DNA of 64,000 bases, taken from the IMG/VR virus record IMGVR_UViG_3300033995_001164, positions 124,001-188,000 of that record; one strand, 5' to 3'. Made by a program: the position numbers and the translations under genes. Positions 12,065 to 56,968 of the stretch are shown piece by piece. The notes under the pieces are model-generated. The model was not told where the DNA came from. It saw only the letters and a program-made list of their open reading frames with translations, and did no database searches. Positions within the stretch are counted from its first letter, which is position 1. Each line of letters starts with the position of its first letter.

Positions 12065-12072
12065 AATTGGCT

Positions 12073-12097
12073 AAAAAGTGGGGACGAATCCCCACTT
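12073..12097 (-). terminator. Intrinsic terminator after tail sheath gene
   Basis: 9-bp stem AAGTGGGGA-TTCG-TCCCCACTT plus a T run on the minus strand. Confidence 0.8.
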
Positions 12098-12107
12098 ATG
12101 GTTTTTA

Positions 12108-28022: not shown

Positions 28023-28175
28023 ATGAAACCAAGAAAAAAAGAAGAAGAGAAAAAGATTAAATTTGCCATTAGTTTAGACCCTAAATTATTTAAACGAATG
28101 GAAGATGATATCACAAATAAATCGAGACTAATCGAAACTTTACTTAAAGAACATTATGGAAAAAAAGATTTGTAG
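28023..28175 (+). CDS. Small RHH-like protein overlapping the HNH start
   Basis: Hand-translated MKPRKKEEEKKIKFAISLDPKLFKRMEDDITNKSRLIETLLKEHYGKKDL* (50 aa), homologous to 24544..24705; TATTTAT at 28011. Confidence 0.75.
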   Translation: MKPRKKEEEKKIKFAISLDPKLFKRMEDDITNKSRLIETLLKEHYGKKDL

Positions 28176-28812
28176 TAAGTGTAAAGAAGAAAAGGAATTT
28201 TGTGAGTTTAATAAAAGAAAAGATTCGAAAGACGGTCATAGAAATGAGTGTAAAATTTGTTGGTATTTAAAAAGCCAAAATTATATTAAAAAATTTCCAC
28301 AAAAAAAACAAGAATATAATAACAAGTGGTTTTCTAAAAATACTTCTTATTATAAACAATATTATAAAAATAATGAAAAAAAATTTTTAGAGTATAAAAT
28401 AAAATTTAACGGTTTAAACCCGGATTATAATAAAAATTATTATGTTAATAATAAGGATTATTTTTCTGATTATGTAATGTTTAAATACGTTAATAATAAT
28501 TTATTTAGATTATCTCACATCATAAGAAATAGAATTAGAACATTTCTTAAATTAAAAAATCTAACTAAAACAAATAAAACTTTTGATATTGTAGGATGTT
28601 CTCCGGAATTCCTTAAAGAACATTTAGAACAACAATTCACGGAAGGAATGTCTTGGGGTAATCAAGGATTGTACGGATGGCACATTGACCACAAAATACC
28701 ATTATCTTCCTCCAATACCGAAGAAGAAATATATAAACTTTGTCATTATACAAATCTTCAGCCACTATGGGCTGAAGATAATTTGAAAAAAAGTAATAAA
28801 ATAATAAATTAA
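28156..28812 (+). mobile_element. Free-standing HNH homing endonuclease gene
   Basis: 218 aa; paralogue of 23964..24563 (CSKCKEEK...GWHIDH.IPLSS...YTNLQPLW..DN). Confidence 0.85.
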
Positions 28813-30482
28813 GATTCTTTTCTTAAAGAACCATCATAGTGGTCAAATCGGTCATGCTCAGTTGGAGTTAATAACAAAATACCTGGTTTAATATTACCTT
28901 TAACAGTTTCCTGATAACAATGAGACATGAGAGTCTGCTCGAATGCGTGCGCCCATTGTGTCTCTAAATAACATTTATAATTACCTATTTTATTTAACAC
29001 AATTGGCCAGTTGGATAAATAGATTTCACCATCAACGTAAGGTAACCCCTGATGTGTTTTAATGTTATTGAATTTAGTTCTTGGTGCGTTTGGGTCTAAT
29101 CCTTGAACAGGTAATAATGGTTTTTCGGGGAATAATTCTACCCTAACATTTTGGGGTACATTGTACCATGAAAATTGTATGTCATTTGAACCATAAAATT
29201 CAGTAAAACTTAATTTTAAAAAATCAAAATTTTCATTTTTAATAATTTGTAATGATTTTGAATATAAGTTTGAAACAAATCTATTAAAACCGTTTTTACA
29301 CACTTCACCTTTTTTAGGGTAAAACGCCATGTCATCTTCAAAAAAGTAATAAAAATCCAAATCAGTTTCATCGAAATGTTCGGCAACAAATACTCTACCA
29401 CCAACAATTCCAATATTATCTTTTTTGATGTGTTCAAATCCATATTCTTCACATAGTTCCTGATATCTTGAAGTTGTCGATAGGTCAGTTGAGTTATCAA
29501 GTAAGAACTTTTTTGGTTTAAGTATGAAGTCCTTATCGTATTCCAACATTGATTTAATTAGGGTTTCAAATTGATTAGGACTATTGAATGTAATAACATA
29601 AAGTCCAACTTTGTTGGTATCCAAGGTATTCTCGACAGACACTTTCCCCTCATTTTTTGGTATTAACTTATCGTCTTTTAAATCTTCAAAAAACTTTCCA
29701 ATTAGTCCACTTGACTCAATTTCAAAATAATTAATTAAATCAGAATGTTTATATGTCATAATACTAAAGATTGATTCTTCAGTACCCATATACCCTTCTT
29801 CTAAAGTTGATTTTAACAATCCATAATAAATTCCGTTAATATCACTTATTGAACTTTTGGGACCACCAAAGAATCCACCTCGAGAAACTTTAGTTACTTC
29901 ATCACCTGCAATTGAATTTAATTTGTCATATTCAAACCCGTGTATTTCGGTCTCAGCTCCATATGGAAAACTGATAAATGAAAACTTTGACACATATTTT
30001 GATAATTTATCAAGAACTTTATCATGAGTAAAATAACCCGGATGTACAGTATTGGTTAAACCTCCATCAATCCAAAACATATATTCCGATTCAAACTTAT
30101 CCATTATTTTTGCGTCGTGTAGTAAGAACACTTTGGACATCACAAGAGGATTATAGTTTTTTAATTTTGCTTGGGTTGATTCCCCTAACCAACCAACTTG
30201 GTCTATCCAACTTGGTCTTGTTCTAATAACTTGAATTATATTGTAAAACTCAGAATTTGTGAACCAAGATAAAGGTCTTTCAATAAATTGAGTGTTTGAT
30301 TCATTTCTTTTTTTGAAAACAAACTCTTTAAGTTCATTATCACCAAATATTATCATATTTTCTTGAACATCTAATAATTGTTCAAATTTATCTAAATAAT
30401 GTTGATAAGACCTAGACCAACCTTCAGATAAGTCACCTCTACCAATATCCCAAATTCCGGTTACTAATGTTATTTTATTCAT
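28809..30482 (-). CDS. HtrL/WlaTC-like protein fused to a GT-A (GT2-like) domain
   Basis: 557 aa; N-terminal TLVTGIWDIGR...MFWIDGG; C-terminal VITFNSP...LLDNS...FFEDD. Confidence 0.65.
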   Translation of the reverse strand: MNKITLVTGIWDIGRGDLSEGWSRSYQHYLDKFEQLLDVQENMIIFGDNELKEFVFKKRNESNTQFIERPLSWFTNSEFYNIIQVIRTRPSWIDQVGWLGESTQAKLKNYNPLVMSKVFLLHDAKIMDKFESEYMFWIDGGLTNTVHPGYFTHDKVLDKLSKYVSKFSFISFPYGAETEIHGFEYDKLNSIAGDEVTKVSRGGFFGGPKSSISDINGIYYGLLKSTLEEGYMGTEESIFSIMTYKHSDLINYFEIESSGLIGKFFEDLKDDKLIPKNEGKVSVENTLDTNKVGLYVITFNSPNQFETLIKSMLEYDKDFILKPKKFLLDNSTDLSTTSRYQELCEEYGFEHIKKDNIGIVGGRVFVAEHFDETDLDFYYFFEDDMAFYPKKGEVCKNGFNRFVSNLYSKSLQIIKNENFDFLKLSFTEFYGSNDIQFSWYNVPQNVRVELFPEKPLLPVQGLDPNAPRTKFNNIKTHQGLPYVDGEIYLSNWPIVLNKIGNYKCYLETQWAHAFEQTLMSHCYQETVKGNIKPGILLLTPTEHDRFDHYDGSLRKES

Positions 30483-30500
30483 ATTATTTTTTAGTTATTT

Positions 30501-31184
30501 TTATTTATAATTTTCGTATATATTATAATATAGGTTAAAAATAGGGGGGACATTAAGAAATGAGTGTACTTTGTGTTCCGAACTTAAAATCCAATTTTCC
30601 GAAGAATATCTATGTTCAAATAAAATAGATTCGTCTAATTTTTTAACATAATTAGATTTGGTCCAAAAAAAGTTACCATTAAATATTTGAATCAACTTTG
30701 TTTTACCTCTAACATTACCGGCATGGTCTTGGTAATTAATTCCACAACAATCAAATCCGTTATCTAATGTTTCAACACAGATTTTCCAATTAGTAATTAA
30801 AAAATGTTCCATCATTAATCTCCACTCTTTAACAGGTTTTTCTCGTATTGACTCGTATTGTGTAACACCTTTAGTATGAAGATAAAGAATATTAGTATTA
30901 TCATTATCGGACATAGAAAATTCTTTAAGTTTACTTAAAGTTTTTGATTCTCCAAATGAATTATTTTCATTAATGAACATTAAATTAAGACTCGGTATTT
31001 TTAATAAAAGTTCCATTAATGTTTCTTCTTCGTTATCAATTTTTTTGTCAAAAAAAACACCAATATTTAATGTTGATACTTCTAATAATCCTGAATTAGT
31101 TAATGATTCAATTTGTTCTTTTACAATATTAACCCAATTATTAATTAAAAAAATGTGATAAAATATTTGTATTTTTTTACCCAT
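30501..31184 (-). CDS. Putative glycosyltransferase-like protein
   Basis: YHIF...LYLHTKG...WR.MMEHF...FNGNFFW pattern. Start moved to ATG 31184, which overlaps the upstream stop. Confidence 0.5.
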   Translation of the reverse strand: MGKKIQIFYHIFLINNWVNIVKEQIESLTNSGLLEVSTLNIGVFFDKKIDNEEETLMELLLKIPSLNLMFINENNSFGESKTLSKLKEFSMSDNDNTNILYLHTKGVTQYESIREKPVKEWRLMMEHFLITNWKICVETLDNGFDCCGINYQDHAGNVRGKTKLIQIFNGNFFWTKSNYVKKLDESILFEHRYSSENWILSSEHKVHSFLNVPPIFNLYYNIYENYK

Positions 31185-31860
31185 AAATTGTGTTAAATGA
31201 TATAAACGATTTATATGATGAGGCATTGGTGGCATTTAGTAAATAATTATAGAATTCGAAATTTTTATTTGGCATATCCTGTATAATGTCCTTAGTAATT
31301 TCCCAAGGAATATGTCTTGCGCTATATGGTAAATTAGTGGCACAACTATGTCCATGAGGATGTCTATCGATATGATATAATGCAAATGTTGTATCAACTA
31401 ACTGTTTTGTCAATAATCCATCAATGATAGTATCTTCACCCCAATTATTTAAACCCCAAGTTTTTAAAAAATGATGATAAGGGGATTCTTCAGATACATT
31501 CCAATTATAAAGTGATAATCCAATTTTTGAATATTCCAAATGGGAATCTAATTTTTCTTTCAATTGGAGTAATGAATTTTTAGGTGTTTTAGATAGGTCT
31601 AAATCAGAGTCAGTGACCACGTAATAATCAAACCCTAATTTATTTGGTAAATTTAAAATCCATGGAGCTCCTTGACCTAAATTTTCAGAATAAATTATTG
31701 TACAAGGATTTGTCTTATACCATTCTAAAAGAGGTTCGTAAGTTGACCCATTATCTAAGATAATAATTTCACCAACATTTTCAAAAGTCTGTAAATCTTC
31801 AACCATTTTTGACGGCCAAGTAAGTAAATTTCTATTATTTATTATTATTGGTATTTTCAT
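31177..31860 (-). CDS. GT2-like glycosyltransferase
   Basis: 227 aa; IIILDNGST and YVVTDSD (DxD). Confidence 0.7.
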   Translation of the reverse strand: MKIPIIINNRNLLTWPSKMVEDLQTFENVGEIIILDNGSTYEPLLEWYKTNPCTIIYSENLGQGAPWILNLPNKLGFDYYVVTDSDLDLSKTPKNSLLQLKEKLDSHLEYSKIGLSLYNWNVSEESPYHHFLKTWGLNNWGEDTIIDGLLTKQLVDTTFALYHIDRHPHGHSCATNLPYSARHIPWEITKDIIQDMPNKNFEFYNYLLNATNASSYKSFISFNTIYG

Positions 31861-33320
31861 TATTTAGTTATTATCCATAATTTATCGTTATTAACTAATT
31901 CTTTATTAGTTACCTCAAACTTATATTCATCTATAATTGAGTTTATAGTTGATATAGTGTAATCTCTATTAGCATATTCAGGGTGTAAATCTTCAATAAA
32001 GTAATAACCCCCCTTTTTTATATGAGGATATAATGTTTTAAAACTAGTTATAATATGTTCCGAAATGTGACTACCATCATCGATAATAAAATCAACCTTA
32101 CCCGATAAATCATATGTTTTAATCATCCTCATTAAATCTTCAGGTTTATTTTGGTCCCCTATAATTGTGGTAATTTTTTCTCTATTACATTTTAAATGGT
32201 TACAGTCTACTATATCAAACCCATAATATTCCATATTAGGGAAAATTAAATCCCAAAATTTTAAACATCCACCAGGAAATCTTGTATCATGTACCCCAAT
32301 TTCAATTATTACTGGAGTTTTATTGATATACTTTGATAACATTTTTTCATAAACCTCACTATACATATGGTTTTCATATATAGAACCTTTATCAATACCC
32401 AACTTATCAGATAATTCGGTAAAACTATTAAAAGTAATGTCCTCATCTAAAATATTTTCTATATTTGTATCCGTTGTATATCCCAAAATACTATCTATCT
32501 TATATTTATTGTTATCTAACAAATCCATAAGGTCTAATATACCTTTTTGTAAATCTAACCAATCCTCAAAATTAAAAAATTTAACATCGTTAGTATGAGT
32601 TAGAATCGATAAAACTTCTTGTTCACTAATTAATTTATTTGTTTTTGTGTAGTATGTTTCAAAAATTGACGAATAATTAGATAAAACTTTTTTAACGGAT
32701 TCACTGTCCCCACCAAATAACCCACCGGGTACTAATTTAAAATCAGTGTTGAACATATCAACTAAAACCGCTTTAAGTTCATAATTTACTTGAATTGATT
32801 CTCCTCTTAAACAAATAAACCCATTATCCGATATTTTTTCATTTATTTTATTTAAAAATAGTTCTGAATGGGCGAAAACATTGATATAATCTCTCCATCT
32901 ATCATGACAACTAGTCCCAAATAAACCAGAATCAATCCATACAACGTTTTTATTATCTTCACACTCATCAAGTAAAAATTGTAATTTATTAAAAATAACT
33001 TCAATATAATTTTTAACACTATAAATTCTATCATGAATTTCCCCTTCAGAAAATTTAAGGTTTCTAATTGGATTTATATTATTAAGATAGTTTTCAGAGT
33101 TTAATTCATGAAATTTTATGGTTATGTTAGGTTGATTAAATTGGTCACCCAAATGATACTTATCATAAGTGTATTGGTTTGTGTAAATCACATACTCAAA
33201 ATCATCAAAAATAATATTTCGTAATGTTTGAGTTAATAATGGGTATGATTTATATACCATACCTCCTCTTGCGTCTTCATAGTTTAACTCGTAAACTGAT
33301 GTCACTATTTTTAGTACCAT
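31860..33320 (-). CDS. HtrL-like domain fused to class I SAM O-methyltransferase
   Basis: 486 aa; VWIDSGL and GGLFGG (HtrL-like); C-terminal IIEIGV, YGFDI, DFIIDDGSH, KGGYYFIEDL. Confidence 0.65.
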   Translation of the reverse strand: MVLKIVTSVYELNYEDARGGMVYKSYPLLTQTLRNIIFDDFEYVIYTNQYTYDKYHLGDQFNQPNITIKFHELNSENYLNNINPIRNLKFSEGEIHDRIYSVKNYIEVIFNKLQFLLDECEDNKNVVWIDSGLFGTSCHDRWRDYINVFAHSELFLNKINEKISDNGFICLRGESIQVNYELKAVLVDMFNTDFKLVPGGLFGGDSESVKKVLSNYSSIFETYYTKTNKLISEQEVLSILTHTNDVKFFNFEDWLDLQKGILDLMDLLDNNKYKIDSILGYTTDTNIENILDEDITFNSFTELSDKLGIDKGSIYENHMYSEVYEKMLSKYINKTPVIIEIGVHDTRFPGGCLKFWDLIFPNMEYYGFDIVDCNHLKCNREKITTIIGDQNKPEDLMRMIKTYDLSGKVDFIIDDGSHISEHIITSFKTLYPHIKKGGYYFIEDLHPEYANRDYTISTINSIIDEYKFEVTNKELVNNDKLWIITK

Positions 33321-34018
33321 TTATCGTGATTGGGAATTAATAAGTTTATATGTTTACTGGAGTTATTATGTAATTCAACCCCATTATTAAATGCAGAAAA
33401 ACACATTTCGTCAATATTTCCTGCGGGTATATTATGTAATTTATCCGAATATTTAATTTCAATACATTTATCCCAAGTGGATAAAAAAGAGTAAAATTTT
33501 TCTTTTTCAATATCCAAAAATTGAATACAGTCTTCCGGCATCCACATATCTTTTTTGTCGTAATTAACACCAAATTTTGATTCGTAATGGGTAAATCGTC
33601 TACCTAACATACTATTAGTCTCAACTTCTTTTTCAAAAAGATATGTTACTTGCCCCGATACACTATTAGGAATGAAACATTCTAAAATATTTTCCCGATT
33701 GAATAATTGTTGATTTGGAATAATATCTGTATCTGTTAAAATTATCTTAGTAAACCCATTATCTAATGCAAATTTTACTGAAAATCTTTTAACCGAGAAA
33801 TCAAAATCATAGTAATTAGTATTATATGTTGAGTATTTTTCATCGTACTCTTTAATATCGGCAACAAATACAAAATCTTCTTTAGTAATTGATTCCGGAC
33901 TATCCGTTACAATAAAAATTTTTGGTTTATCTTTAAGGTTTTTAAATGATTCTATCATTCTATTTGTTTGGTTATAATATCTTTCCCCATAACAAAATGT
34001 TGCAATTGCGTAACTCAT
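33311..34018 (-). CDS. Putative GT-A glycosyltransferase
   Basis: 235 aa; IFIVTD and ILTDTD (DxD) motifs; inside the GT operon. Confidence 0.5.
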   Translation of the reverse strand: MSYAIATFCYGERYYNQTNRMIESFKNLKDKPKIFIVTDSPESITKEDFVFVADIKEYDEKYSTYNTNYYDFDFSVKRFSVKFALDNGFTKIILTDTDIIPNQQLFNRENILECFIPNSVSGQVTYLFEKEVETNSMLGRRFTHYESKFGVNYDKKDMWMPEDCIQFLDIEKEKFYSFLSTWDKCIEIKYSDKLHNIPAGNIDEMCFSAFNNGVELHNNSSKHINLLIPNHDKWY

Positions 34019-34029
34019 ATTATTATTTA

Positions 34030-35295
34030 TTAACTAACATGATTGTGTGTAATTCTTCCTGTTATTCTATCACACCATCCTTTAGATTCAGAGTGAGGCC
34101 ATACAACCCAATAATCAGGTAATGCATCCGTTTGGAATTCTCTCCAAATTTTACAATAACCATCAGGGTCTCTCAACATATTAGTAATTTCGTTTTTATC
34201 CGCATCTTTTCTAAATAAAGTTTCGTCTTTATTATTGTGAAATGCTACCACCCAAAAATCATAATCTTTTTCAGGAACACTAGTATATCCAACATCAACA
34301 CAATGTTTAAACACCATACAAAAACTATTTTTCCATTCTTCTTCTGTTTCAAAATTATATGGATTTGGTGGATAATTTTTATCTAAAGTATGTTTATCAA
34401 TTGCTCGTTTTTCAAATAAAAGTCCTGAATATTTTTCATATTCAGTTAATGTCCTAACAGGCCCAAAGCCATATGGACCATCATGACCTTCTTGAACTTC
34501 TCCATCCATACCAAATAGTTTTCGATTTGTATGATGAGAATGTTTATTCTTATCCCCCCAACTCTTATCGTCATCCCATTGTTTGGTTCTACCTTTTCTA
34601 GTGTATTCATGATAAACCACCGGAATTTGTGGGTGAAATAAATCATAACCCCAAGTATATGCTCTTGCTGCAATTGAAATCTCTTCACCATGGAAGTAAT
34701 ATTCCGGATTATGTTGAACTTCGATTGAAAAGGCACCTAAAGTAAAACAAAAGTGAGCAGAATAGAATCTTGCTGTAACAGGCTTTTTTAATTCTTTCCA
34801 TCCCGGAATTGTCTCAGGTAAAAAGAATACTGCCCCTTCAGGGATGAATCTATCAAACACCATTCTCCAAGCTTCATTTACTCGACCAGCAGGGTCATTT
34901 TCAGGGTCAAAGGATGGAACATAACCCGTAAGTAGAGGCTTCTCATAACCATCCTTTTGTAACCCCTTAATCATTTTAATTAAAATGTCGTCCCAATTTT
35001 TTACAAATCTCATATGGGAATCTATTTGAAGGGTATATGTTTCACCGTCGTATAATTGTTGAGTTAGATTTCTTGCCCAACAAACTCCTTTAGAATCTTC
35101 GTGAGGAATATCAAGTATTCTAAATCTTTTGTCTTTTCTATAGTCTTCTAATTTATCAAATCCGTCTTCTTCACTAAATTGTCTTGCAATCCCAAACGTG
35201 ATGTTTTTAGGTTTTTTTGCGTTTGACAACATATCTTTGATTGTTGGTTCTAATTGTGGGTCTCTATACGACGCGATTTGAACAAATATTTTCAT
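34030..35295 (-). CDS. GT60-like (Gnt1 / polypeptide GlcNAc-transferase-type) glycosyltransferase
   Basis: 421 aa; IFVQIASYRDP, GVCWAR, YTLQIDSHMRF, YFHGEEI, AYTWGYDLF match the family pattern (DSH DxH motif). Confidence 0.75.
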   Translation of the reverse strand: MKIFVQIASYRDPQLEPTIKDMLSNAKKPKNITFGIARQFSEEDGFDKLEDYRKDKRFRILDIPHEDSKGVCWARNLTQQLYDGETYTLQIDSHMRFVKNWDDILIKMIKGLQKDGYEKPLLTGYVPSFDPENDPAGRVNEAWRMVFDRFIPEGAVFFLPETIPGWKELKKPVTARFYSAHFCFTLGAFSIEVQHNPEYYFHGEEISIAARAYTWGYDLFHPQIPVVYHEYTRKGRTKQWDDDKSWGDKNKHSHHTNRKLFGMDGEVQEGHDGPYGFGPVRTLTEYEKYSGLLFEKRAIDKHTLDKNYPPNPYNFETEEEWKNSFCMVFKHCVDVGYTSVPEKDYDFWVVAFHNNKDETLFRKDADKNEITNMLRDPDGYCKIWREFQTDALPDYWVVWPHSESKGWCDRITGRITHNHVS

Positions 35296-35319
35296 ATTAC
35301 TACTTTTTAGTTTAAAAAT

Positions 35320-35350
35320 AAAAAACCCCCGAGATAAGTCGAGGGTTTTT
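35320..35350. terminator. Intrinsic terminator (imperfect stem)
   Basis: AAAAACCCCCGA-GATAAG-TCGAGGGTTTTT. Confidence 0.65.
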
Positions 35351-35363
35351 AAAATATATTTTA

Positions 35364-35759
35364 AATTAAAATGTTATGCGCATTGATTAAAATTATTTAA
35401 ATTAATTTCTCTCACACCACCGGTAATTAAATACCGTGAGTGTCATTCGAATAATGACCATAAGGTGTTATAACCCTAAAACTTATGTTAGAGTATTAGT
35501 TAAAGTTGGTGTATTAGGTTCTTGTCGGCGTTGGAGTTTAAGTTACACTAACCGGTGGGAAAACCCCTTGATTCACTAAAGAGACCGAATTTTTAAAAAA
35601 TGGTGCAATTGAATACGTATTATCTATCAACCATATATTTTTTGATTGGGATGGATTTAATTCAACTTGGTATTCCCATAGTGAATCTTCACATCTTCGG
35701 TAATTAAAGTTCACTAAAGTTGAACCGGTGTTCGTTAAAGTATATTTGCTACATGCCAT
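35364..35759 (-). pseudogene. Truncated fibre-like gene with decayed Pro/Thr linker
   Basis: The 73-aa ORF stops at TAA 35540-35538; the same frame continues TPTPTRT*, and a +1 frame gives PNTPTLTNTLT*. Confidence 0.5.
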
Positions 35760-35879
35760 GTTATTTCTATTTAAATATAAATACTACGATAGTATTGATT
35801 TTATGTTTTTATGCTAAAAAAAAATATAATTGACCCTTATCACCGAGATTAATGAACCGTAGGGTCTGTGGGTTAATTT

Positions 35880-36740
35880 TTAATTAATATTAGTTGATGT
35901 TACTGTTGGGGTTGGAGTTGAACCAGTAGGGGAAATACCTTGTTTTAATCTAATAGAATATCCTTTACCTTTACTATCAGGTCCGTGATAAACATCGGTA
36001 CGCCCGTAATTTAAGTTCATAACCATTACTGAACCACCAATTTCTGTGGTCGTCCAAAAACTTGCACGTTCATTAAGTAAATCTGGAAAACCTCCATCGG
36101 ACATAACACCACTAGGAACGCCTGAGAAACCGATTTCGTTTGTTGCACCTGCATTAGGAGCGTACCATAATCCGTTATTGTCTTCTATTGTACCCGTTGT
36201 TTTTAACTTCCCACCAGCAATAGAATTACCCCCTAAACATATCTCAAAAGTATCCCAATCAGATTCACTTGGAACTATATAACCCACCGAACCAATTCCT
36301 CTACTATCCTCAACAACATACCAATTATATAGTTTACCATAAATTATACCAATATCAAAATCAAAGTTATAATAACACCAAGCAGGCGTTTGATTAGTGT
36401 TAGCATCAGCCCATTCTGTACTGTTTATTGCTTGTGGTATTATATCCCCATTTCTAAACGTTGTACCGTTGAAATTTTCGGTCATCCAACCATCGAGACA
36501 AGTTGGTATTGGTGTTGTTGTGGGTGTAGGTGTTGGAGTCGGTTCCGGAACTTCTAAACTATATGTGTAACCATATGTAGGAACATAACAATTATAAGTC
36601 CCATAGATATATCCTGAGAGGTAATTAAATGGAAATACTTGAGTCCCAAGATTAACTGTCCCCCCTGATAGAGGTAAAAATGTTACATCAGTGGTTTGTC
36701 CACTTAAATTATTACTTAAAATCCTTATTCCAATTGGCAT
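35880..36740 (-). CDS. Fibre/adhesin-like protein with Fib_succ_major (FISUMP) domain and PT linkers
   Basis: 286 aa; [13 protein letters not shown] linker, then WMTENF...AWCYYN...YGKLYNW...VPSESDW...FWTTT...GYSIR. Confidence 0.75.
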   Translation of the reverse strand: MPIGIRILSNNLSGQTTDVTFLPLSGGTVNLGTQVFPFNYLSGYIYGTYNCYVPTYGYTYSLEVPEPTPTPTPTTTPIPTCLDGWMTENFNGTTFRNGDIIPQAINSTEWADANTNQTPAWCYYNFDFDIGIIYGKLYNWYVVEDSRGIGSVGYIVPSESDWDTFEICLGGNSIAGGKLKTTGTIEDNNGLWYAPNAGATNEIGFSGVPSGVMSDGGFPDLLNERASFWTTTEIGGSVMVMNLNYGRTDVYHGPDSKGKGYSIRLKQGISPTGSTPTPTVTSTNIN

Positions 36741-36777
36741 ATCAATAAATACTCAATTATTTTATTTTATCTTATTT

Positions 36778-37347
36778 CTAAAAACAAAGACCCTGATTTA
36801 TTATTAATGTTCCGGATATTTGTATAAACCTAGCACCATCAGATATTGTAAAATTGGCGTTAATTGGAGGGAATGTCATAGTCTTATCTCCAAATACGTG
36901 GTCACCAACAGTCAATAATGAAAAAGGTTTCGTCGAATATACCGCAACATTTGCGGGATTGGCAAATGAATTAACTGACTCACAAACATTTTGATACCAA
37001 CCTCCCGTTCTTAAATTTTGAACATACAATGGTGATGGTGTAATCGACGGTGTTACGGTATTTGTAGGGGTTGGAGTTTGTGTCGTTGGAGTTGCAGATA
37101 AACTAACCGTAGGGGTAACCGTAGGAGTTACCGTAGAAGTTGCAGTAGATGTTGGACATAATCCAATATTAGCGATTGTTAAAGGTGCACCATAATCTTC
37201 CTGAACTAATTCGTTGGCACAAACATAATCCGTTTGTAATGGATTAATTTGTGAGACATTTACAATTCCAGTACACCCTGTCCATGTATAATACCCTATT
37301 TGAATATTATTATAATTTACTATTCTAAAATAATTACAATTGACCAT
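36778..37347 (-). CDS. Small virion decoration/fibre-like protein with Thr/Pro linker
   Basis: 189 aa; two Cys-containing modules joined by TSTATSTVTPTVTP...TPTPTNTVTPS. Confidence 0.7.
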   Translation of the reverse strand: MVNCNYFRIVNYNNIQIGYYTWTGCTGIVNVSQINPLQTDYVCANELVQEDYGAPLTIANIGLCPTSTATSTVTPTVTPTVSLSATPTTQTPTPTNTVTPSITPSPLYVQNLRTGGWYQNVCESVNSFANPANVAVYSTKPFSLLTVGDHVFGDKTMTFPPINANFTISDGARFIQISGTLIINQGLCF

Positions 37348-37358
37348 ATATGACGTTG

Positions 37359-40094
37359 TTAATAAATTTTAGTAAGTGTAAAATTTCTTGAAAATATTTG
37401 ATTTCCTGCATTATTGGTATTCCATTGGACATTCACTGATAATGTGTTGATTATTGTGGTGTCGAATGTTGTATTATTAATCTCACTTAACGGATATCCT
37501 TCATAGGTAAGTCCAGAATCTTTAAGGTAGGAGAATAGTCCACCGGATGATATTGAAGCAACGGTGGTTCCTCCGATTTGTCTTATTGTGAAATATAAAG
37601 TCAACAACCAAGGTCTTGAGGTTGAGGTATCCAAATCTATTACTCCTGTGTCAATGAGTAATGCACCACCAGTTGTTCTAACGTGAACATGGATTGTTGC
37701 AGTGTTAATACAAGATAAAATACCATCGAATGATGCCTGAAACGAATCACCTACTTTGAAACCATTTGCTGGAACAGACAAAGTTCCAACTCCTGGTCCC
37801 ATTACACTAGTCTCGACAGTGGTCGCTGATACCGTAGCACTATCACCTGTTTGAGCAAATAAACCATATGCCGTTGGGTATGGAGAAACGGGTGCAGTTA
37901 CCAACAACCCATTTGAACCAACACAAACTGAACTCCCTGAGGAACCTGTAAAACTACAAATAGATAAATCATTTACAAATGTTGTACAAGCTCTGTTTGC
38001 TGTGATATTACTACCAATTATATTAGTATGGGTAAATGCGGATGATATGGTATTACACATTCCCCCAAGAATTGACGAACAAGAAGAACAAACTCTATTT
38101 CCAAAACCACCACCTATTGTTGAATGAGAACCAGAGGCAGTATTATACGAACCACCACCAATTGTTGAACAAAAACCAGAAGCAAGATTGAAAAACCCAC
38201 CGCCAACTGTTGAATAACCATTTGAAGTGCAATTACTATAACCACCTCCAATTGTTGACCAATTTCCAAGTGATGAATTATTCTTTCCTCCACCAATTGT
38301 TGAACAATCACCATAAGCGGTATTTAGATACCCACCACCAATTGTTGAACTATTACCAGAAGAAGTATTACGATAACCACCACCAATTGTTGAATAATCA
38401 CCTAAAGCAAGATTAGAACTACCCCCACCAATTGTTGAGTAAGTACAAGAAGCGGTATTACCACGACCTCCACCAATTGTTGAAGTACCAGAAGCAGTGT
38501 TATCACGACCACCTCCAATTGTTGAATAATTATTTGAAGAAGTATTATACGAACCGCCGCCAACGGTTGAAAGATACCCAGTTGCAGTATTGTCACGACC
38601 CCCACCTATTGTTGAATAACATCCAGAAGCGATATTACTTAGACCTCCTCCAATTGTTGATGTAGCACCTGTTGCTGAATTATAAGAACCTCCACCAATG
38701 AATGATGAAAAACCTAATGCACAATTACCTCTACCACCACCAATTGTTGAACTAGCTCCTGTTGCACAGTTTCTAAATCCACCTCCAATTGTCGATAGTC
38801 TACCAGCATTACAACAAACAATTGTCCCTGATAATATACCTGTATACATATCAAATGTTCCACCTGAAGTATTGTGTCCAATACCACCACCAATTGTAAC
38901 GCCTAATGAACAATATTCGTTTATTGGTGATTGAATTATATTTCTTTGTCCACCGGCAATAACCGAATATCTTGAATTTGTAATGTTACAACGACCACCA
39001 CCAATTGTTGAAGTATTACCGGAAGCAGTATTAGAATAACCACCACCAACTGTTGAATTAAGTCCTGTAGCATTATTATAAGAACCACCACCAATTGTTG
39101 ATTGGTAACCTAATGCAATAATATTACTTCTACCACCACCAATTGTTGAATAATCACCATTAGCAATATTAGAACCGCCACCACCAATTGTTGAGCAATT
39201 TCCAGATGCGATGTTGCGATAACCACCGCCAATAGACGACAATCCAGAAGCAATGTTATTAAAACCTCCGGCAACTGTTGAAGGGCCTAAAGAAGCGGTG
39301 TTTCCACCCCCACCACCAACTGTTGAATAAGTACCTGACACATTATTACATCTACCTCCTCCAATCGATGTCCAAGTACCTGAAGCAACATTAGTTTGAC
39401 CACCACCAATTGTTGAGCAATTTCCAGATGAGATGTTGCGATAACCACCGCCAATAGACGACAATCCAGAGGCGGTATTAAAAAGACCACCACCAACTGA
39501 TGAAGTACTGGAAGAAGTGTTCCTACCCCCTCCACCAACTGTTGAATAACATCCATAAGCATTATTACAATAACCACCACCAATTGTTGAACAATCTCCA
39601 GAAGCAATGTTATGATAACCACCTCCAATTGTTGAGCCACTACCCAAAGTGGTGTTGTTATAACCACCCCCAATTGTTGAACTACTACAATAAGTAATAT
39701 TGCTAAAACCACCCCCGATTGTTGTTGTATGTCCGGAAGCGGTGTTCCCTTGACCACCCCCGATTGTAGAATTAACCCCATAAGCACTATTTAAAGCTCC
39801 ACCACCAATTTTTGCAAACACATTTGTTGCTTTATTATCTTTACCACCACCAATTGTACTATAAAAACCTGTCGATGTATTAGTACCTGAAATAGGTTCG
39901 ATTCCGGTTGGTGTTGAACTATTAAATCTAAATGGTGAATTAACACTACTTCCTGAAAATTGTTCGGTTAATGAGGAAAAATATATTGAATTTGTAATTC
40001 CTGATGATTCTACATCATAATTAACAATCACCATTAAAGACGATGGTTGTCCTGATATTGCTAATGGTAATTGAGATATTGGTAAATTAGGCAT
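37359..40094 (-). CDS. Fibre/adhesin with about 39 (S/T)TIGGGxxN repeats (YadA-head-like beta-roll)
   Basis: 911 aa; N-terminus MPNLPISQLP, repeat period about 15 aa, globular C-terminus. Confidence 0.75.
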   Translation of the reverse strand: MPNLPISQLPLAISGQPSSLMVIVNYDVESSGITNSIYFSSLTEQFSGSSVNSPFRFNSSTPTGIEPISGTNTSTGFYSTIGGGKDNKATNVFAKIGGGALNSAYGVNSTIGGGQGNTASGHTTTIGGGFSNITYCSSSTIGGGYNNTTLGSGSTIGGGYHNIASGDCSTIGGGYCNNAYGCYSTVGGGGRNTSSSTSSVGGGLFNTASGLSSIGGGYRNISSGNCSTIGGGQTNVASGTWTSIGGGRCNNVSGTYSTVGGGGGNTASLGPSTVAGGFNNIASGLSSIGGGYRNIASGNCSTIGGGGSNIANGDYSTIGGGRSNIIALGYQSTIGGGSYNNATGLNSTVGGGYSNTASGNTSTIGGGRCNITNSRYSVIAGGQRNIIQSPINEYCSLGVTIGGGIGHNTSGGTFDMYTGILSGTIVCCNAGRLSTIGGGFRNCATGASSTIGGGRGNCALGFSSFIGGGSYNSATGATSTIGGGLSNIASGCYSTIGGGRDNTATGYLSTVGGGSYNTSSNNYSTIGGGRDNTASGTSTIGGGRGNTASCTYSTIGGGSSNLALGDYSTIGGGYRNTSSGNSSTIGGGYLNTAYGDCSTIGGGKNNSSLGNWSTIGGGYSNCTSNGYSTVGGGFFNLASGFCSTIGGGSYNTASGSHSTIGGGFGNRVCSSCSSILGGMCNTISSAFTHTNIIGSNITANRACTTFVNDLSICSFTGSSGSSVCVGSNGLLVTAPVSPYPTAYGLFAQTGDSATVSATTVETSVMGPGVGTLSVPANGFKVGDSFQASFDGILSCINTATIHVHVRTTGGALLIDTGVIDLDTSTSRPWLLTLYFTIRQIGGTTVASISSGGLFSYLKDSGLTYEGYPLSEINNTTFDTTIINTLSVNVQWNTNNAGNQIFSRNFTLTKIY
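38090..39860 (-). repeat. Coding tandem repeat, unit about 45 bp
   Basis: Recurring CCACCAATTGTTGA on the + strand; 68-bp duplicate with one mismatch at 39181-39248 and 39403-39470. Confidence 0.9.
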
Positions 40095-40095
40095 A

Positions 40096-42474
40096 TTAAT
40101 AAGTTATTATTATTTTATTTAAATCTTCTTGTAATAAATACGCAAGATTTTCTTGTAATAAGAAATTTGTGTCTTCAATCGGTGTATTTGTCGGTGTAGG
40201 TGTAGGTGTTTCAGTATTTGTATTTGTCGGTGTAGGTGTAGGTGTTTCAGTATTTGTAGGCGTTGGAGTAGTCGTTGGAGTAGGTGTAGGTGTTTCAGTA
40301 TTTGTAGGCGTTGGAGTAGGCGTTGGAGTAGGTGTTGGAGTTTCAGTATTTGTTGGCGTTGGAGTAGGTGTTGGAGTTTCAGTATTTGTTGGCGTTGGAG
40401 TAGTCGTTGGAGTTTCAGTATTTGTTGGCGTTGGAGTAGTCGTTGGAGTAGTCGTTGGAGTTTCAGTATTTGTTGGCGTAGGTGTTGGAGTTTCGGTATT
40501 TGTAGGCGTTGGAGTATTCGTTGGAGTTTCAGTATTTGTGGGTGTTGGTGTGGGTGTTGGTGTAGGAGTTGGTGTAGGTTCAATTAATTCATAGTATAAA
40601 TCATTTGATGGTATGGTGATTCTACAGTTCAAACAATTAGGGTCTAATAAATTATATTTTAATTTTAATAAATTAAAATTGTGTTTTATTTGGGAGGTAT
40701 TTAATGGTTCGGTATACATTCTAAATGAACTAATATCTCCAATCATACTTCCCCCAAATATTTCTTCTAATCTAATATTAGTTGTTAAACCGGAATATTC
40801 TGTGTGTGTGAGGTCGTTAGTTGTAAGGCATTCGGGGTCTTGTTGGTAAACCATTTCTTCTAAATTTGGTGGGCATCCACCTGAGAATGTTAAATTATCG
40901 TGAAGACCTTGGGTTCCACCCCCCAATGAAATATTATAACCAACACCGATTTGTTTTTCTTTTGGGGTGTTAAGTAATCTTGGAATGATTTCCTCAAAGT
41001 TTTCGGCAACCATAAACAACTTACCATTAACATAGAACTTCATAGTTCCTAGTCTATATTTCTCTTCTGCTGTCCAATTATCATTAAATGTTACTACTTC
41101 GGTAGTTGCCGGGTCATAAGTTTCTTGATGAGTAATTGGAGGTTCAATTAGACTAATACTATTATTAGCGGTAGTTGCGGTATAAATTTCTTTAACTATT
41201 AATCCAAGACCTCCTTTGATATTTAAATCACAAGTATCTAACCATTCATATCTTTGAAATACTGCATCAATCTGAACCCAATGTTCCACATTTGAATAAG
41301 TTGTCCCACTACAATCATCAAAAATACCTCTTGTTGAGCACCATTCGGTCACCGATGTTCCAGTAGTATATGTAATTCCTGTAACACAAGTTCCAGTTGT
41401 CTCACATCCACCTGTAATTCTATAGGTTTTAACACATAGTTTAGGACTTCCGGTGTCACCACTTAATCTCAACGATAATGCGTTTGATACTCCGTCATAT
41501 AATGGGTCTGTTTCAGGATACTGTGCCGATACACCACAAGAACAAGGACATCCACAACTACAATTGTATGAAGTACCACCAGATTGTTGATAAACTTTTA
41601 AACAATCATGAGGGTCACTGCCTAATAAACCACACGCACAAGTGTCCATACAAGTTAAACCTGAGGTAACTCTTGTATATCCTGAATCTTGAATTGGGGA
41701 ACCGTCAGGGTAATGGTAGAATTTATTTTCAGCCCTTGCACCCATATAAAAGAAAGTTCCTTTGTTATTTGGGTATCGAGAATTTAATCCAACCGAAGTG
41801 TCGCCCGTCCATCTATATCTTAACATAATTTCCGTACTCCAACCTAAACTTGGTCTTTGTGGAAAAATTTGATAATCATATCCCGCAATTTTATAAAATC
41901 CTTGGAAGAATCCTCCATTTAATTTCGCAACATATCCTACATCTCCACCATCATTACTATAAGATAAATCATATGAATATGAATTATCATTCCACAATCT
42001 ATTTTCAGAAGTTGTAAATCCTGTAATAGGGTGCATTTTCATTCTCCTATCGTACTTGTATCTACTAAATTTGTCTGATTGTGAAATATAAAGACCTGTA
42101 TTGATTTGAATTGTCTCTCCGGACATATTTTTTACAAGACCATTATCAATACCTGTTAATCCAACATCACATAAATCAGTAATAATTGGACAAAGATTTG
42201 GGTCAGTATTAGTGGGGTTCCAATAGTTTTCAGATACAATGGTGTCATAATTAAAGGTACAGGCACTTATTGGACATAATGTTGTTCCTGAACTATTAAA
42301 ATCAAACTTAAATGGCATTCTGTTACCATCTAATTCCCCTATTAATAAAGGTGAAAATACAACCTCTTGGTCGTAGTCTTTTTCGTCTGAAGCAAGACAA
42401 ATGTCCGTGATTTCATTCGCCGGTTTTAGACCCCATCGTCTAAAATTATACTGATTAATGTTTTGATATGCCAT
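40096..42474 (-). CDS. LamG/ConA-like virion protein with C-terminal mucin-like PT tract
   Basis: FYVNGKL and [22 protein letters not shown] (LamG-like), then about 135 aa of PTPTNTET repeats. Start moved to ATG 42474, which follows TATTTAT. Confidence 0.75.
40170..40580 (-). repeat. Coding tandem repeat ([10 protein letters not shown])n
   Basis: GGTGTTGGAGTTTCAGTATTTGT-type units on the + strand. Confidence 0.9.
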
Positions 42475-42483
42475 ATACAATTG

Positions 42484-42510
42484 ATAAATACCTTGGTTCA
42501 TAGTATTTAT
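42484..42510. promoter_or_regulatory. Back-to-back TATTTAT motifs at a divergent junction (candidate late promoters)
   Basis: ATAAATA at 42484-42490 (minus, before ATG 42474) and TATTTAT at 42504-42510 (plus, before ATG 42526); the same motif precedes about 15 starts in the window. Confidence 0.55.
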
Positions 42511-56967: not shown

Positions 56968-56968
56968 T

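What the first reader, a model, noticed from the sequence alone, without database searches (positions are those of the whole stretch)
28809..42474. Candidate phage-encoded mucin-type O-glycosylation system: GT60-like enzyme beside Pro/Thr-repeat fibres
Seen: 13.7 kb of minus-strand genes run from four or five fibre/adhesin-like genes, most with Thr/Pro tracts (about 135 aa of PTPTNTET at 40170-40580; shorter tracts in 36778 and 35880; a relic at 35538), into six GT-type genes. The first of these (34030..35295) has the IASYRD / QIDSH / GEE signature. Established: that signature marks GT60 (Dictyostelium Gnt1, trypanosome mucin-initiating alpha-GlcNAc transferases), relatives of GT27 mucin initiators that modify Thr in Pro-rich tracts. 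Virion glycosylation is known in some actinobacteriophages and in giant-virus fibrils. Inference: enzyme and substrate are encoded together; GT60 primes the PT tracts, GT2/HtrL-like enzymes extend the glycan and the fused O-methyltransferase caps it, giving glycan-coated fibres. A terminator at 35320-35350 separates the two halves, so linkage is positional rather than one transcript.
Basis: partly seen in the sequence, partly recalled or inferred. Interest (0 to 1): 0.82.

Follow-up and report, generated by a model that had tools for sequence, protein, structure and literature searches.

The report
Phage GT60 glycosylation of Pro/Thr fibres
A giant bacteriophage carries, beside fibre-like genes full of Pro-Thr repeats, a highly conserved enzyme of the family that starts mucin-type sugar coats in protists; comparison with other phages and with bacteria suggests it sugar-coats those repeats, but this has not been shown at the bench.

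Summary
Window 28809-42501 (minus strand) holds five fibre-like genes. Three carry Pro/Thr tracts and one is a truncated relic. A conserved terminator follows, then six soluble glycosyltransferase-type genes. The first (34030-35295) is a clear PF11397/GT60 member, with an invariant DxH motif and a predicted fold closest to GT27 mucin-initiating GalNAc-transferases.

New points:
- The conserved core is GT60 plus a two-domain glycosyltransferase (28809-30482). The four genes between them are one variant of a hypervariable cassette.
- The same GT60 + dual-GT pair occurs in XacN1-like jumbo phages, whose virions stain as glycoproteins in the literature, in a crAss-like prophage, and in many bacterial phyla.
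- In bacteria, genes with Pro/Thr/Ser tracts are about 7-fold enriched next to the pair, and most carry twin-arginine-like signals.
- Xoo-sp13 (GT60+) has 12 proteins with long P/T/S tracts. Its nearest GT60-less relative, RsoM2USA, has none.

Most likely this is a cytoplasmic, mucin-type-like O-glycosylation module acting on Pro/Thr tracts of phage fibre proteins (confidence about 0.6). The sugar, the linkage and the virion location are inferred. The main rivals are host envelope remodelling and other protein targets. It is a new variant of a known kind and is testable in cultured phages.

The parts
40096..42501 (-). 801-aa fibre-like protein. About 640 aa are conserved, including a LamG/concanavalin-like part. 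A 138-aa Pro/Thr tract follows (DNA 40174-40587), then a 25-aa tail.
   Evidence: tract. (Atlas: nearest named clusters are Laminin_G_3; a lead only). (homologues at a median 80% identity in 42 loci).
37359..40094 (-). 911-aa fibre with about 40 copies of a 15-residue STIGGG-type repeat and a C-terminal globular part. It has no Pro/Thr tract and is present in few relatives.
   Evidence: (45-nt period arrays). (UspA1_rep below cut-off). (found in only 5 other loci, as partial matches).
36778..37347 (-). 189-aa protein: an N-terminal part of about 65-85 aa, a Pro/Thr/Ser linker, then a domain of about 89 aa.
   Evidence: one of three paralogous families, each with a conserved N-terminal domain followed by Pro/Thr tracts.
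35880..36740 (-). 286-aa protein: a 62-aa N-terminal domain, a Pro/Thr linker, a Fib_succ_major (FISUMP) domain, and a short Pro/Thr tail.
   Evidence: PF09603, E 8.7e-25. (TIGR02145)..
35351..35759 (-). Truncated fibre gene. The 73-aa ORF (35538-35759) is the conserved N-terminal domain. A stop falls at the start of the Pro/Thr tract, and a decayed remainder follows.
   Evidence: translation through the region. (homologues are mostly about 330-830 aa with 60-210 aa of Pro/Thr tract).
35321..35350 (-). Intrinsic terminator between the fibre genes and the glycosyltransferase genes.
   Evidence: 12-pair stem plus T run. (hairpin kept in 12 of 13 related loci; 3 pairs show compensatory changes).
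34030..35295 (-). GT60-family glycosyltransferase: a GT-A catalytic domain (about 1-300; DxH = D92-S93-H94; H229) plus a conserved C-terminal beta domain (about 325-414). It is soluble.
33311..34018 (-). 235-aa putative GT-A glycosyltransferase (GT8/Nucleotid_trans-like). It belongs to the variable cassette.
   Evidence: Atlas lead, score 0.95-0.96. No Pfam hit. Found in only 2 other related loci.
31860..33320 (-). 486-aa fusion: an HtrL-like glycosyltransferase domain (about 3-245) plus a class I SAM methyltransferase domain (about 300-454). It belongs to the variable cassette.
   Evidence: hhalign to the HtrL domain of the 557-aa family: 91%, E 1e-6. (phrog_21658 methyltransferase, E 1.7e-15). 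(Methyltransf_24, weak).
31177..31860 (-). 227-aa putative GT-A protein (DNGS ... DSD motifs). It belongs to the variable cassette.
   Evidence: (weak hhalign to the GT-A domain of the 557-aa family, E 0.017) and motifs read. Weak support.
30501..31235 (-). 244-aa DUF8361-like protein with a GT-A-like predicted fold. It belongs to the variable cassette.
   Evidence: Atlas score 0.98 to DUF8361 clusters; TM about 0.6 to GT2 models. A lead only.
28809..30482 (-). 557-aa dual glycosyltransferase: an HtrL_YibB-like domain (3-252) plus a second GT-A domain (about 290-557; DNS, EDD). It is the conserved partner of GT60.
   Evidence: PF09612, E 6.8e-19. (AF2 pLDDT 88; best PDB neighbours are two-domain GTs: LH3, K4CP, LARGE1). 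(co-occurs with GT60 in phages and bacteria).

Best explanation
The block is a phage-borne, cytoplasmic, mucin-type-like protein O-glycosylation module together with its likely acceptors.

Shown by the sequence:
- A soluble GT60-family enzyme with an intact DxH metal site.
- A tightly packed operon that ends in a conserved two-domain glycosyltransferase.
- A variable set of extra transferases between the two, here including an HtrL-like/methyltransferase fusion.
- Directly upstream, behind a conserved terminator, modular fibre-like proteins whose domains are joined by Thr/Pro tracts.

Inferred:
- During infection GT60 transfers a first sugar to Thr hydroxyls of the Pro/Thr tracts of newly made fibre proteins in the cytoplasm. 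By analogy with characterised GT60 enzymes this would be alpha-GlcNAc from UDP-GlcNAc.
- The dual glycosyltransferase and the cassette enzymes extend the glycan, and here also methylate it.
- The tracts become stiff, protease-resistant, glycan-covered stalks that hold out the C-terminal binding modules (LamG-like, FISUMP and others) on the virion.
- Swapping the cassette changes the glycan between close relatives.

The same GT60 + dual-GT module in bacteria would glycosylate Pro/Thr-tract proteins before export, apparently by the Tat route.
For: Family:
- PF11397 at E 6.3e-65, and a full-length match to phrog_24687.
- D92-S93-H94 and H229 are invariant in homologues down to 39% identity.
- The AF2 model has pLDDT 90, and the 34 best PDB neighbours are all GT27 polypeptide GalNAc-transferases.
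- Characterised GT60 enzymes act on polypeptides: Skp1 hydroxyproline, and Thr of T. cruzi mucins (PMC6939170, PMC3769586).

Linkage in the window and its lineage:
- Pro/Thr tracts occur nowhere else in the 64 kb window.
- In nearly all of 80 related loci the genes just upstream of GT60 carry 20-300 aa of Pro/Thr tract, and none lies downstream.

Linkage in other phage lineages:
- L098/L100: a 404-aa protein with three Pro/Thr tracts ends 35 bp before GT60.
- L127: a crAss-like prophage in which Pro/Thr-bearing muzzle proteins flank GT60.

Linkage in bacteria:
- There were 492 hits, and GT60 is paired with the dual GT in 44 of the 80 loci fetched.
- P/T/S-tract genes make up 7.7% of genes within 1 kb of the module against 1.2% beyond 5 kb (Fisher p 1e-4).
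- 13 of 17 adjacent tract proteins have an RRx(F/A/L)-type motif followed by a hydrophobic stretch.
- The other neighbours are heterogeneous and include no Wzx/Wzy/ABC export genes.
- The Pro/Thr association appears in all major clades of the GT60 tree.

Genome-level contrast:
- Xoo-sp13 (GT60+) has 12 ORFs with at least 30 aa of tract, 1,798 residues in all.
- RsoM2USA, its nearest relative without GT60, has the same GC content and none.

Other support:
- XacN1 virions contain at least two PAS-stained glycoproteins, and its authors point to ORF334, the GT60 homologue.
- None of the block's proteins has a membrane segment.
- GT60 is at least as conserved as the DNA polymerase (median 85% against 79%).
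Against: - There is no biochemical evidence for this phage or its lineage.
- Pro/Thr linkers are common flexible linkers and need not be glycosylated.
- Within the window's lineage the adjacency is a single inherited arrangement.
- In Xoo-sp13 the tract proteins are dispersed, so adjacency there is uninformative.
- 52 of 80 bacterial loci show no tract gene within the fetched flanks.
- HtrL-type transferases are known from LPS/LOS core loci (PMC4172580).
- A conserved terminator separates the fibre genes from the transferase genes.
- The 911-aa fibre has no tract, and one tract gene is broken.
- Virion location of these proteins is assumed from their domain types.
- The donor sugar and Thr specificity rest on analogy.
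- The Tat calls come from a simple pattern, not a validated predictor.
- The genome-level contrast is one pair of genomes.
Confidence: 0.6

Rival explanations
1. The transferases remodel a host envelope glycan (LPS/LOS core, capsule or another polysaccharide) during infection, for example to block superinfection. The Pro/Thr fibre genes are merely neighbours.
For: HtrL/YibB-type proteins lie in LPS/LOS core loci (PMC4172580 listed). A comparative review of jumbo phages reads their glycosyltransferase clusters as modifiers of outer polysaccharides (PMC7824862). The hypervariable cassette resembles O-antigen-type diversity. UDP-glucose dehydrogenase and more GT2 genes lie on the plus strand.
Against: No characterised GT60/GT27 enzyme acts on a lipid or a polysaccharide primer. 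The block has no membrane protein, flippase, polymerase or exporter, and none was found among 28 bacterial neighbours. GT60 is the most conserved gene of the block, which is unexpected for a host-serotype function. This reading does not explain the enrichment of tract genes next to the module or the Xoo-sp13/RsoM2USA contrast.
Confidence: 0.12
2. The module glycosylates phage proteins, but not the Pro/Thr tracts. Targets would be, for example, capsid, sheath or folded domains, as in mycobacteriophages. The tracts are plain linkers.
For: Virion glycosylation in Che8-type mycobacteriophages targets capsid proteins (PMC11256854 citing Freeman 2023). The XacN1 PAS-positive bands were not assigned to proteins. 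The window holds a very large sheath and other structural genes.
Against: The association with tract proteins recurs in unrelated genomic settings, including bacteria, which have no capsids. The closest characterised enzymes prefer Thr/Pro-rich or hydroxyproline sites.
Confidence: 0.15
3. The transferases build or decorate a small molecule or secondary metabolite. The carbamoyl- and methyltransferases in related clusters are tailoring enzymes.
For: A carbamoyltransferase follows GT60 in XacN1, Xoo-sp13 and Jiulongibacter. Methyltransferase fusions are present. The review PMC7824862 proposes sugar-derived metabolites for some cyanophage clusters.
Against: No scaffold-forming enzymes (NRPS, PKS, aminoglycoside-type) were seen in the window or in the sampled neighbourhoods. 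O-methylation and carbamoylation are also ordinary glycan decorations. This reading does not explain the tract association.
Confidence: 0.05
4. The transferases hypermodify phage DNA by glycosylating a hydroxymethylated base. This is suggested by their position next to the DNA polymerase.
For: The block abuts polB (24753-27467). In XacN1-like phages it lies near the polymerase and RNase H. Phage DNA glycosylation is well known.
Against: The fold and family are those of polypeptide transferases, not of known DNA glycosyltransferases. The same module sits in bacterial chromosomes beside exported tract proteins. No hydroxymethylase or TET/JBP gene was found among the window ORFs scanned. A multi-enzyme, hypervariable, methylated or carbamoylated glycan is not what DNA modification systems look like.
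Confidence: 0.03

Closest known systems
CAZy GT60 / Pfam PF11397: Dictyostelium and Toxoplasma Gnt1 (Skp1 hydroxyproline alpha-GlcNAc-transferase) and T. cruzi UDP-GlcNAc:polypeptide alpha-GlcNAc-transferase
   Same: Strong profile match, GT-A fold, DxH metal motif. It is soluble and cytoplasmic like Gnt1, and its likely acceptors are Thr/Pro-rich like the T. cruzi mucins.
   Different: It is prokaryotic/viral and carries an extra conserved C-terminal beta domain of about 95 aa (duplicated in L094). No prolyl hydroxylase was seen nearby. Donor, linkage and acceptor are untested.
GT27 polypeptide GalNAc-transferases (animal and Toxoplasma mucin-type O-glycosylation initiators)
   Same: They are the nearest solved structures (top 34 Foldseek hits, E about 1e-9 to 1e-10). 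Both are a catalytic GT-A domain followed by a C-terminal accessory domain.
   Different: Sequence identity is 10-18% and there is no sequence-level match to PDB. GT27 enzymes are Golgi type II membrane proteins with a ricin-type lectin domain. The phage domain is smaller and unassigned.
Skp1 glycosylation pathway (Gnt1, then the two-domain PgtA, GT74 + GT2)
   Same: A GT60 initiator is followed by a bifunctional two-domain glycosyltransferase, all in the cytoplasm (PMC6939170).
   Different: Homology between the 557-aa protein and PgtA was not tested, because no PgtA sequence or structure was at hand. The acceptor here would be repetitive tracts, not a single hydroxyproline.
Two-domain glycosyltransferases LARGE1, K4CP chondroitin polymerase, PmHS2, LH3/COLGALT1
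   Same: They are the best structural neighbours of the 557-aa protein: two GT-A-type domains in one chain. UDP-glucose dehydrogenase genes lie in the window and beside the bacterial module.
   Different: TM-scores are only 0.24-0.29 over the whole chain, because the domain arrangement differs. Polymerase activity is pure speculation.
Virion glycosylation in mycobacteriophages (Che8, Rita; Freeman et al. 2023) and the XacN1 glycoprotein observation
   Same: Phage-encoded soluble glycosyltransferases modify structural proteins in the cytoplasm. XacN1 carries the GT60 and dual-GT homologues, and its virions stain with PAS.
   Different: The mycobacteriophage enzymes and targets (capsid) differ. 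No GT60 or Pro/Thr-tract link has been described. The XacN1 bands were not identified.
Chlorovirus PBCV-1 A064R (two glycosyltransferase domains + methyltransferase) and other giant-virus glycan machinery
   Same: Virus-encoded, soluble, multi-domain transferase with a fused O-methyltransferase that finishes a capsid glycan. Variants change antigenic class (PMC9614988).
   Different: It makes N-linked glycans on a eukaryotic virus capsid. Homology to the 486-aa protein was not tested.
Cytoplasmic glycosylation of bacterial adhesins before export (serine-rich repeat proteins with GtfA/B; from my own knowledge, not tested here)
   Same: O-GlcNAc-type priming of Ser/Thr-rich repeats in the cytoplasm, extension by further transferases, then export by a dedicated route.
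   Different: GtfA/B are GT-B enzymes of Gram-positive bacteria and use the accessory Sec system. Here the enzyme is GT-A/GT60 and the signal peptides look Tat-like.

Membership tests
GT60 / Pfam PF11397 (GlcNAc) | Significant match to the family profile above the curated cut-off | tested here: met
   E 6.3e-65, 220.4 bits against a cut-off of 21. The best stretch covers residues 53-294 of the protein and profile positions 94-350 of 352.
GT60 / Pfam PF11397 (GlcNAc) | GT-A fold with a DxH metal-binding motif and a downstream His, as in GT27/GT60 | tested here: met
   D92-S93-H94 and H229 are invariant in 16 sequences down to 39% identity; a confident model whose nearest solved folds are GT27 enzymes.
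GT60 / Pfam PF11397 (GlcNAc) | Retaining transfer of GlcNAc from UDP-GlcNAc | not testable with these tools
   This needs an enzyme assay. Donor specificity cannot be read from the sequence.
GT60 / Pfam PF11397 (GlcNAc) | Polypeptide acceptor (Thr/Ser in Pro-rich tracts, or hydroxyproline) | tested here: inconclusive
   The evidence is circumstantial only: tract genes next to the module in phages and bacteria, and the genome contrast.
Mucin-type O-glycosylation system (initiating polypeptide transferase + dense Thr/Pro acceptor + extending enzymes) | Acceptor proteins with long, dense Thr/Pro repeats | tested here: met
   a 138-aa tract that is 51% Thr and 30% Pro. Across the lineage the tracts are 49% Thr, 26% Pro and 4% Ser (the detector itself favours Pro/Thr).
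Mucin-type O-glycosylation system (initiating polypeptide transferase + dense Thr/Pro acceptor + extending enzymes) | The tracts actually carry O-glycans | not testable with these tools
   The only indirect evidence is PAS-positive bands in XacN1 virions. The bands were not assigned to proteins.
HtrL_YibB (PF09612 / TIGR02192) | Match above the Pfam cut-off in the 557-aa protein | tested here: met
   68.9 bits against 24.1, residues 3-252.
HtrL_YibB (PF09612 / TIGR02192) | Equivalog of E. coli YibB (NCBIfam cut-off) | tested here: not met
   79.3 bits against a cut-off of 264.9. It is a relative of the domain family, not a YibB orthologue, and it carries a second GT-A domain.
Phage DNA glycosyltransferases (T4 alpha/beta-GT and relatives) | Profile or fold match to a known DNA glycosyltransferase, with a partner base hydroxymethylase or oxygenase | tested here: not met
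   there was no such match among Pfam hits, PHROG hits or the top 50 PDB neighbours; no hydroxymethylase or TET/JBP gene among the window ORFs scanned. The rest of the roughly 309 kb genome was not seen.
Fib_succ_major / FISUMP domain (286-aa protein) | Match above the curated cut-offs | tested here: met
   PF09603, 88.5 bits against 33.9. TIGR02145, 56.4 bits against 41.65.
Virion structural (tail fibre) proteins | Homology to a known virion protein, or proteomic detection | tested here: inconclusive
   The PHROG structural matches are only to the low-complexity tract. Fibre-like repeats and lectin-type domains are suggestive. In L127 the tract proteins match crAss muzzle proteins. No proteome exists for this phage.

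The most novel reading that the evidence does not exclude
GT60 plus the two-domain glycosyltransferase form a self-contained, cytoplasmic, mucin-type O-glycosylation system. It is widespread in bacteria, where it would act on Tat-exported Pro/Thr-tract proteins. Several phage lineages captured it to clothe their fibres in a glycan brush whose structure is diversified by cassette swapping. On this reading it is a prokaryotic counterpart, possibly a forerunner, of the eukaryotic GT60/GT27 mucin and Skp1 pathways. The dual enzyme may even polymerise a repeating disaccharide, as LARGE1 and K4CP do.
Probability: 0.35. Interest if true: 0.85.

Novelty: new variant of a known kind. Interest (0 to 1): 0.72.

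Why it matters
If true, abundant environmental jumbo phages make mucin-like glycoprotein fibres with their own enzymes. More than 7,200 GT60 protein clusters and 480 viral contigs were found. That would extend phage virion glycosylation well beyond actinobacteriophages. It would give the first function to prokaryotic GT60 enzymes, and it would point to an unrecognised bacterial route of cytoplasmic O-glycosylation followed by apparent Tat export. It would also bear on the origin of eukaryotic mucin-type and Skp1 glycosylation. Glycan-coated fibres could affect adsorption, protease resistance, stickiness to particles or mucus, and immune recognition of therapeutic phages. The hypothesis is directly testable, because XacN1, Xoo-sp13, RAS14/CM1 and the bacterium Jiulongibacter sediminis are in culture.

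Tried and rejected
- Megablast of the whole block against 50,697 phage records found nothing.
- Sequence searches of PDB with GT60 (single sequence and profile) and with the 557-aa profile gave no useful hit. Only fold comparison worked.
- A single-sequence scan of bacterial genomes with the 557-aa protein found nothing. The profile scan with GT60 did.
- Pfam at E up to 10 gave nothing for the 235-, 227- and 244-aa proteins, the C-terminal half of the 557-aa protein, the 73-aa ORF or the 125-aa ORF.
It was rerun without them.
- A paper on glycosylated 5-hydroxycytosine in viral DNA does not mention this family or these phages.
- Literature searches for GT60 or PF11397 in phages or bacteria found no prior description.
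- I first counted the Pro/Thr tracts in the giant XacN1/Xoo-sp13 protein about 9 kb from GT60 as positional support. I withdrew that after the whole-genome scan showed such proteins scattered over Xoo-sp13.
- Pro/Thr hits 4 kb from the module in Achromobacter, Trinickia and Paraherbaspirillum look like VgrG-type proteins, so I treated them as background.
- The label 'tract gene nearby' is not clustered on the GT60 tree (19 changes against 22 in shuffles). The tree therefore gives no co-evolution signal. It shows only that the association is spread over all clades.

Full report
**What the window is.** The window is about 30% G+C and encodes a 1,070-aa tail sheath, a baseplate hub, a family B DNA polymerase, an intein-bearing SNF2 helicase, PhoH and dUTPase. 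It is identical to part of a 309 kb IMG/VR contig, and relatives reach 321 kb. It is therefore a jumbo myovirus with no close cultured relative.

On the minus strand, 42501 to 28809 holds five fibre-like ORFs, a terminator and six tightly packed ORFs.
- The 801-aa protein ends in a 138-aa tract of 70 Thr, 42 Pro, 12 Asn and 11 Glu (DNA 40174-40587). A 25-residue tail follows.
- The 189-aa and 286-aa proteins have an N-terminal part of about 62-83 aa, a Pro/Thr linker and a C-terminal domain. In the 286-aa protein this is a FISUMP domain.
- The 73-aa ORF is the N-terminal domain of a third paralogue. It is cut by a stop exactly where relatives start their tract, and TPTPTRT follows the stop. 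Homologues are mostly about 330-830 aa.
- The 911-aa protein is a repeat fibre without a tract.
- No other ORF in the 64 kb has a Pro/Thr tract.

**The first transferase is a GT60 enzyme.**
- It matches PF11397 at E 6.3e-65 and matches phage family phrog_24687 over its full length.
- D92-S93-H94 (DxH), H229, E205 and D218 are invariant in homologues down to 39% identity.
- An AlphaFold model (pLDDT 90) has a GT-A domain plus a conserved C-terminal beta domain.
- Its 34 best PDB neighbours are all GT27 polypeptide GalNAc-transferases. There is no sequence-level PDB match.
- Characterised GT60 enzymes glycosylate polypeptides: Skp1 hydroxyproline, and Thr of T. cruzi mucins (PMC6939170, PMC3769586).

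**The other transferases.**
- The 557-aa protein is an HtrL_YibB-like domain plus a second GT-A domain. Its best structural neighbours are two-domain enzymes: LH3, K4CP, LARGE1, COLGALT1 and PmHS2. The whole-chain TM-scores are low.
- The 486-aa protein is an HtrL-like domain fused to a methyltransferase.
- The 235-, 227- and 244-aa proteins are GT-A-like only by weaker leads.
- None of the block's proteins has a membrane segment.

**Conservation and variability.**
- GT60 has 480 relatives in viral contigs and more than 7,200 protein clusters in metagenomes.
- In the 80 closest loci the order is: fibre genes, GT60, variable cassette, 557-aa protein, 125-aa ORF, polB.
- Median identities are GT60 85%, polB 79% and the 557-aa protein 73%. 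The loci were chosen by GT60 similarity, which biases this comparison.
- Between GT60 and the 557-aa gene there are 36 protein clusters in about 30 layouts. The commonest layout is two genes, found in 45 loci. The window's four-gene layout is rare.
- The terminator hairpin upstream of GT60 is conserved with compensatory changes. Fibre genes and transferase genes are therefore separate transcription units throughout the lineage.

**Linkage to Pro/Thr tracts in phages.**
- In nearly all related loci the genes just upstream of GT60 carry 20-300 aa of tract, often as several tracts between small domains.
- A distant lineage (L098/L100, 37-39% identity) has a 404-aa protein with three tracts that ends 35 bp before GT60.
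- In a Saprospiraceae contig, GT60 sits between crAss-type muzzle proteins that carry tracts.
- XacN1-like phages keep the pair: GT60, carbamoyltransferase, two ORFs, then the 557-aa homologue at 42% identity.
- The whole Xoo-sp13 genome has 12 tract proteins scattered over 309 kb. One is annotated 'mucin-16-like'. Adjacency there is therefore not evidence.
- The genome-level contrast is evidence. The nearest relative without GT60 or the 557-aa protein is Ralstonia phage RsoM2USA (capsid 49% identical, G+C 41.4% against 40.9%). It has no ORF with 30 aa of tract in 344 kb.
- XacN1 virions contain at least two PAS-stained glycoproteins. The authors suggested ORF328 and ORF334 as the enzymes, and ORF334 is the GT60 homologue (PMC5852040).

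**Bacteria.** A profile scan found 492 GT60 homologues in bacterial genomes of many phyla, including isolates.
- The 557-aa homologue accompanies GT60 in 44 of the 80 loci fetched, usually right beside it.
- P/T/S-tract genes make up 17 of 220 genes within 1 kb of the module against 4 of 337 genes beyond 5 kb (odds ratio 7, p 1e-4).
- Thirteen of the 17 adjacent tract proteins have an RR motif followed by a hydrophobic stretch, which looks like a twin-arginine signal. This is a pattern match only. It would fit export of a protein already glycosylated in the cytoplasm.
- In Jiulongibacter sediminis the locus reads: UDP-glucose dehydrogenase, epimerase, a second GT60, the tract protein, GT60, carbamoyltransferase, then a methyltransferase-HtrL-GT fusion.
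- Other neighbours are heterogeneous and include no polysaccharide export genes.
- On a FastTree of GT60, phage sequences fall in at least three separate places. The window's lineage lies next to Saprospiraceae/Lewinellaceae sequences, and tract-adjacent loci occur in all major clades.

**Interpretation.** I read the block as a cytoplasmic, mucin-type-like O-glycosylation module with its acceptors. GT60 primes Thr in the tracts. The dual enzyme and the cassette enzymes extend the glycan, and here methylate it. The result is glycan-covered stalks that hold out binding modules (confidence about 0.6).
- Shown: the family, the fold, the catalytic motif, solubility, synteny, cassette variability and the statistical association.
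- Inferred: acceptor, sugar, linkage, order of action, virion location and biological benefit.

**Rivals.**
- Host envelope remodelling (0.12): supported by the HtrL link to LPS loci and by PMC7824862.
- Other protein targets (0.15).
- A glycosylated small molecule (0.05).
- DNA modification (0.03).

**Novelty.** Phage virion glycosylation is known in mycobacteriophages (PMC11256854), and virus-encoded glycan machinery is known in giant viruses (PMC9614988). The XacN1 authors already guessed a role for their transferases. I found no description of prokaryotic or phage GT60 function, of its pairing with the dual transferase, or of its link to Pro/Thr-tract proteins. I rate it a new variant of a known kind.

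Noticed in passing
window 46290-47507, 50154-52928, 53040-54197, 56930-57775 (+ strand): There is a second, dispersed set of sugar genes: a phrog_7162 glycosyltransferase, an FkbM methyltransferase, a GT2_4/GT92-like protein, a double GT2 protein, UDP-glucose dehydrogenase and another GT2. The phage's glycan capacity is therefore larger than the finding covers.
   Followed up: partly
window 28156-28812 (+): An HNH-type endonuclease-like ORF (HIDH ... N motifs, read by eye) is wedged between the 557-aa transferase gene and the 125-aa ORF. It is present in only 8 of the related loci, at 44-80% identity, so it is probably a mobile homing element.
   Followed up: partly
window 18671-21559 (+): The SNF2-family helicase is interrupted by an intein with a LAGLIDADG homing endonuclease domain.
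   Followed up: no
window 48210-48926 and 48967-49854 (+): A dUTPase ORF ends in a Hint/intein N-terminal part. The next ORF has weak DUF1064 and other hits. This may be an intein-interrupted or split dUTPase gene.
   Followed up: no
window 12108-15320 (-), 2638-7692 (-): The tail sheath is unusually long (1,070 aa, with the sheath domains only in the last 230 residues). A 1,684-aa protein has no family match.
   Followed up: no
L116 8510-9235, L117 3839-4471, L124 9155-9874 (Gemmatimonadaceae): The tract proteins directly upstream of GT60 begin with a domain of about 100 aa that looks PqqD/RRE-like by eye. In L116 and L117 an RR motif plus a hydrophobic segment and a Thr/Pro/Ser/Ala tail follow. 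The domain was not tested against profiles.
   Followed up: no
L123 (Jiulongibacter sediminis) 7942-8862; L130 (Chthoniobacter) 11297-12529: Some bacterial loci carry two GT60 paralogues side by side. One is a short 306-aa form without the C-terminal beta domain.
   Followed up: no
L094 10001-11716: In one XacN1-like contig the C-terminal beta domain of GT60 is duplicated in tandem.
   Followed up: no
Xoo-sp13 MN047793.1 108649-111639, 264916-270306, 131854-140146: GenBank annotators named tract-rich proteins 'mucin-16-like protein' and 'endo-1,4-beta-xylanase A precursor'. Five of the six adjacent ORFs Xoosp13_222-227 (all but the short _223) also carry tracts.
   Followed up: partly
L101, L102, L108 (Saprospiraceae MAG contigs, G+C 0.33-0.34): These are the closest cellular homologues of the phage GT60 (67-70% identity) and of the 557-aa protein (61-64%). 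They come from low-GC Saprospiraceae and have an RR-signal tract protein next to them. This hints at the host group or the gene source of the phage lineage.
   Followed up: partly
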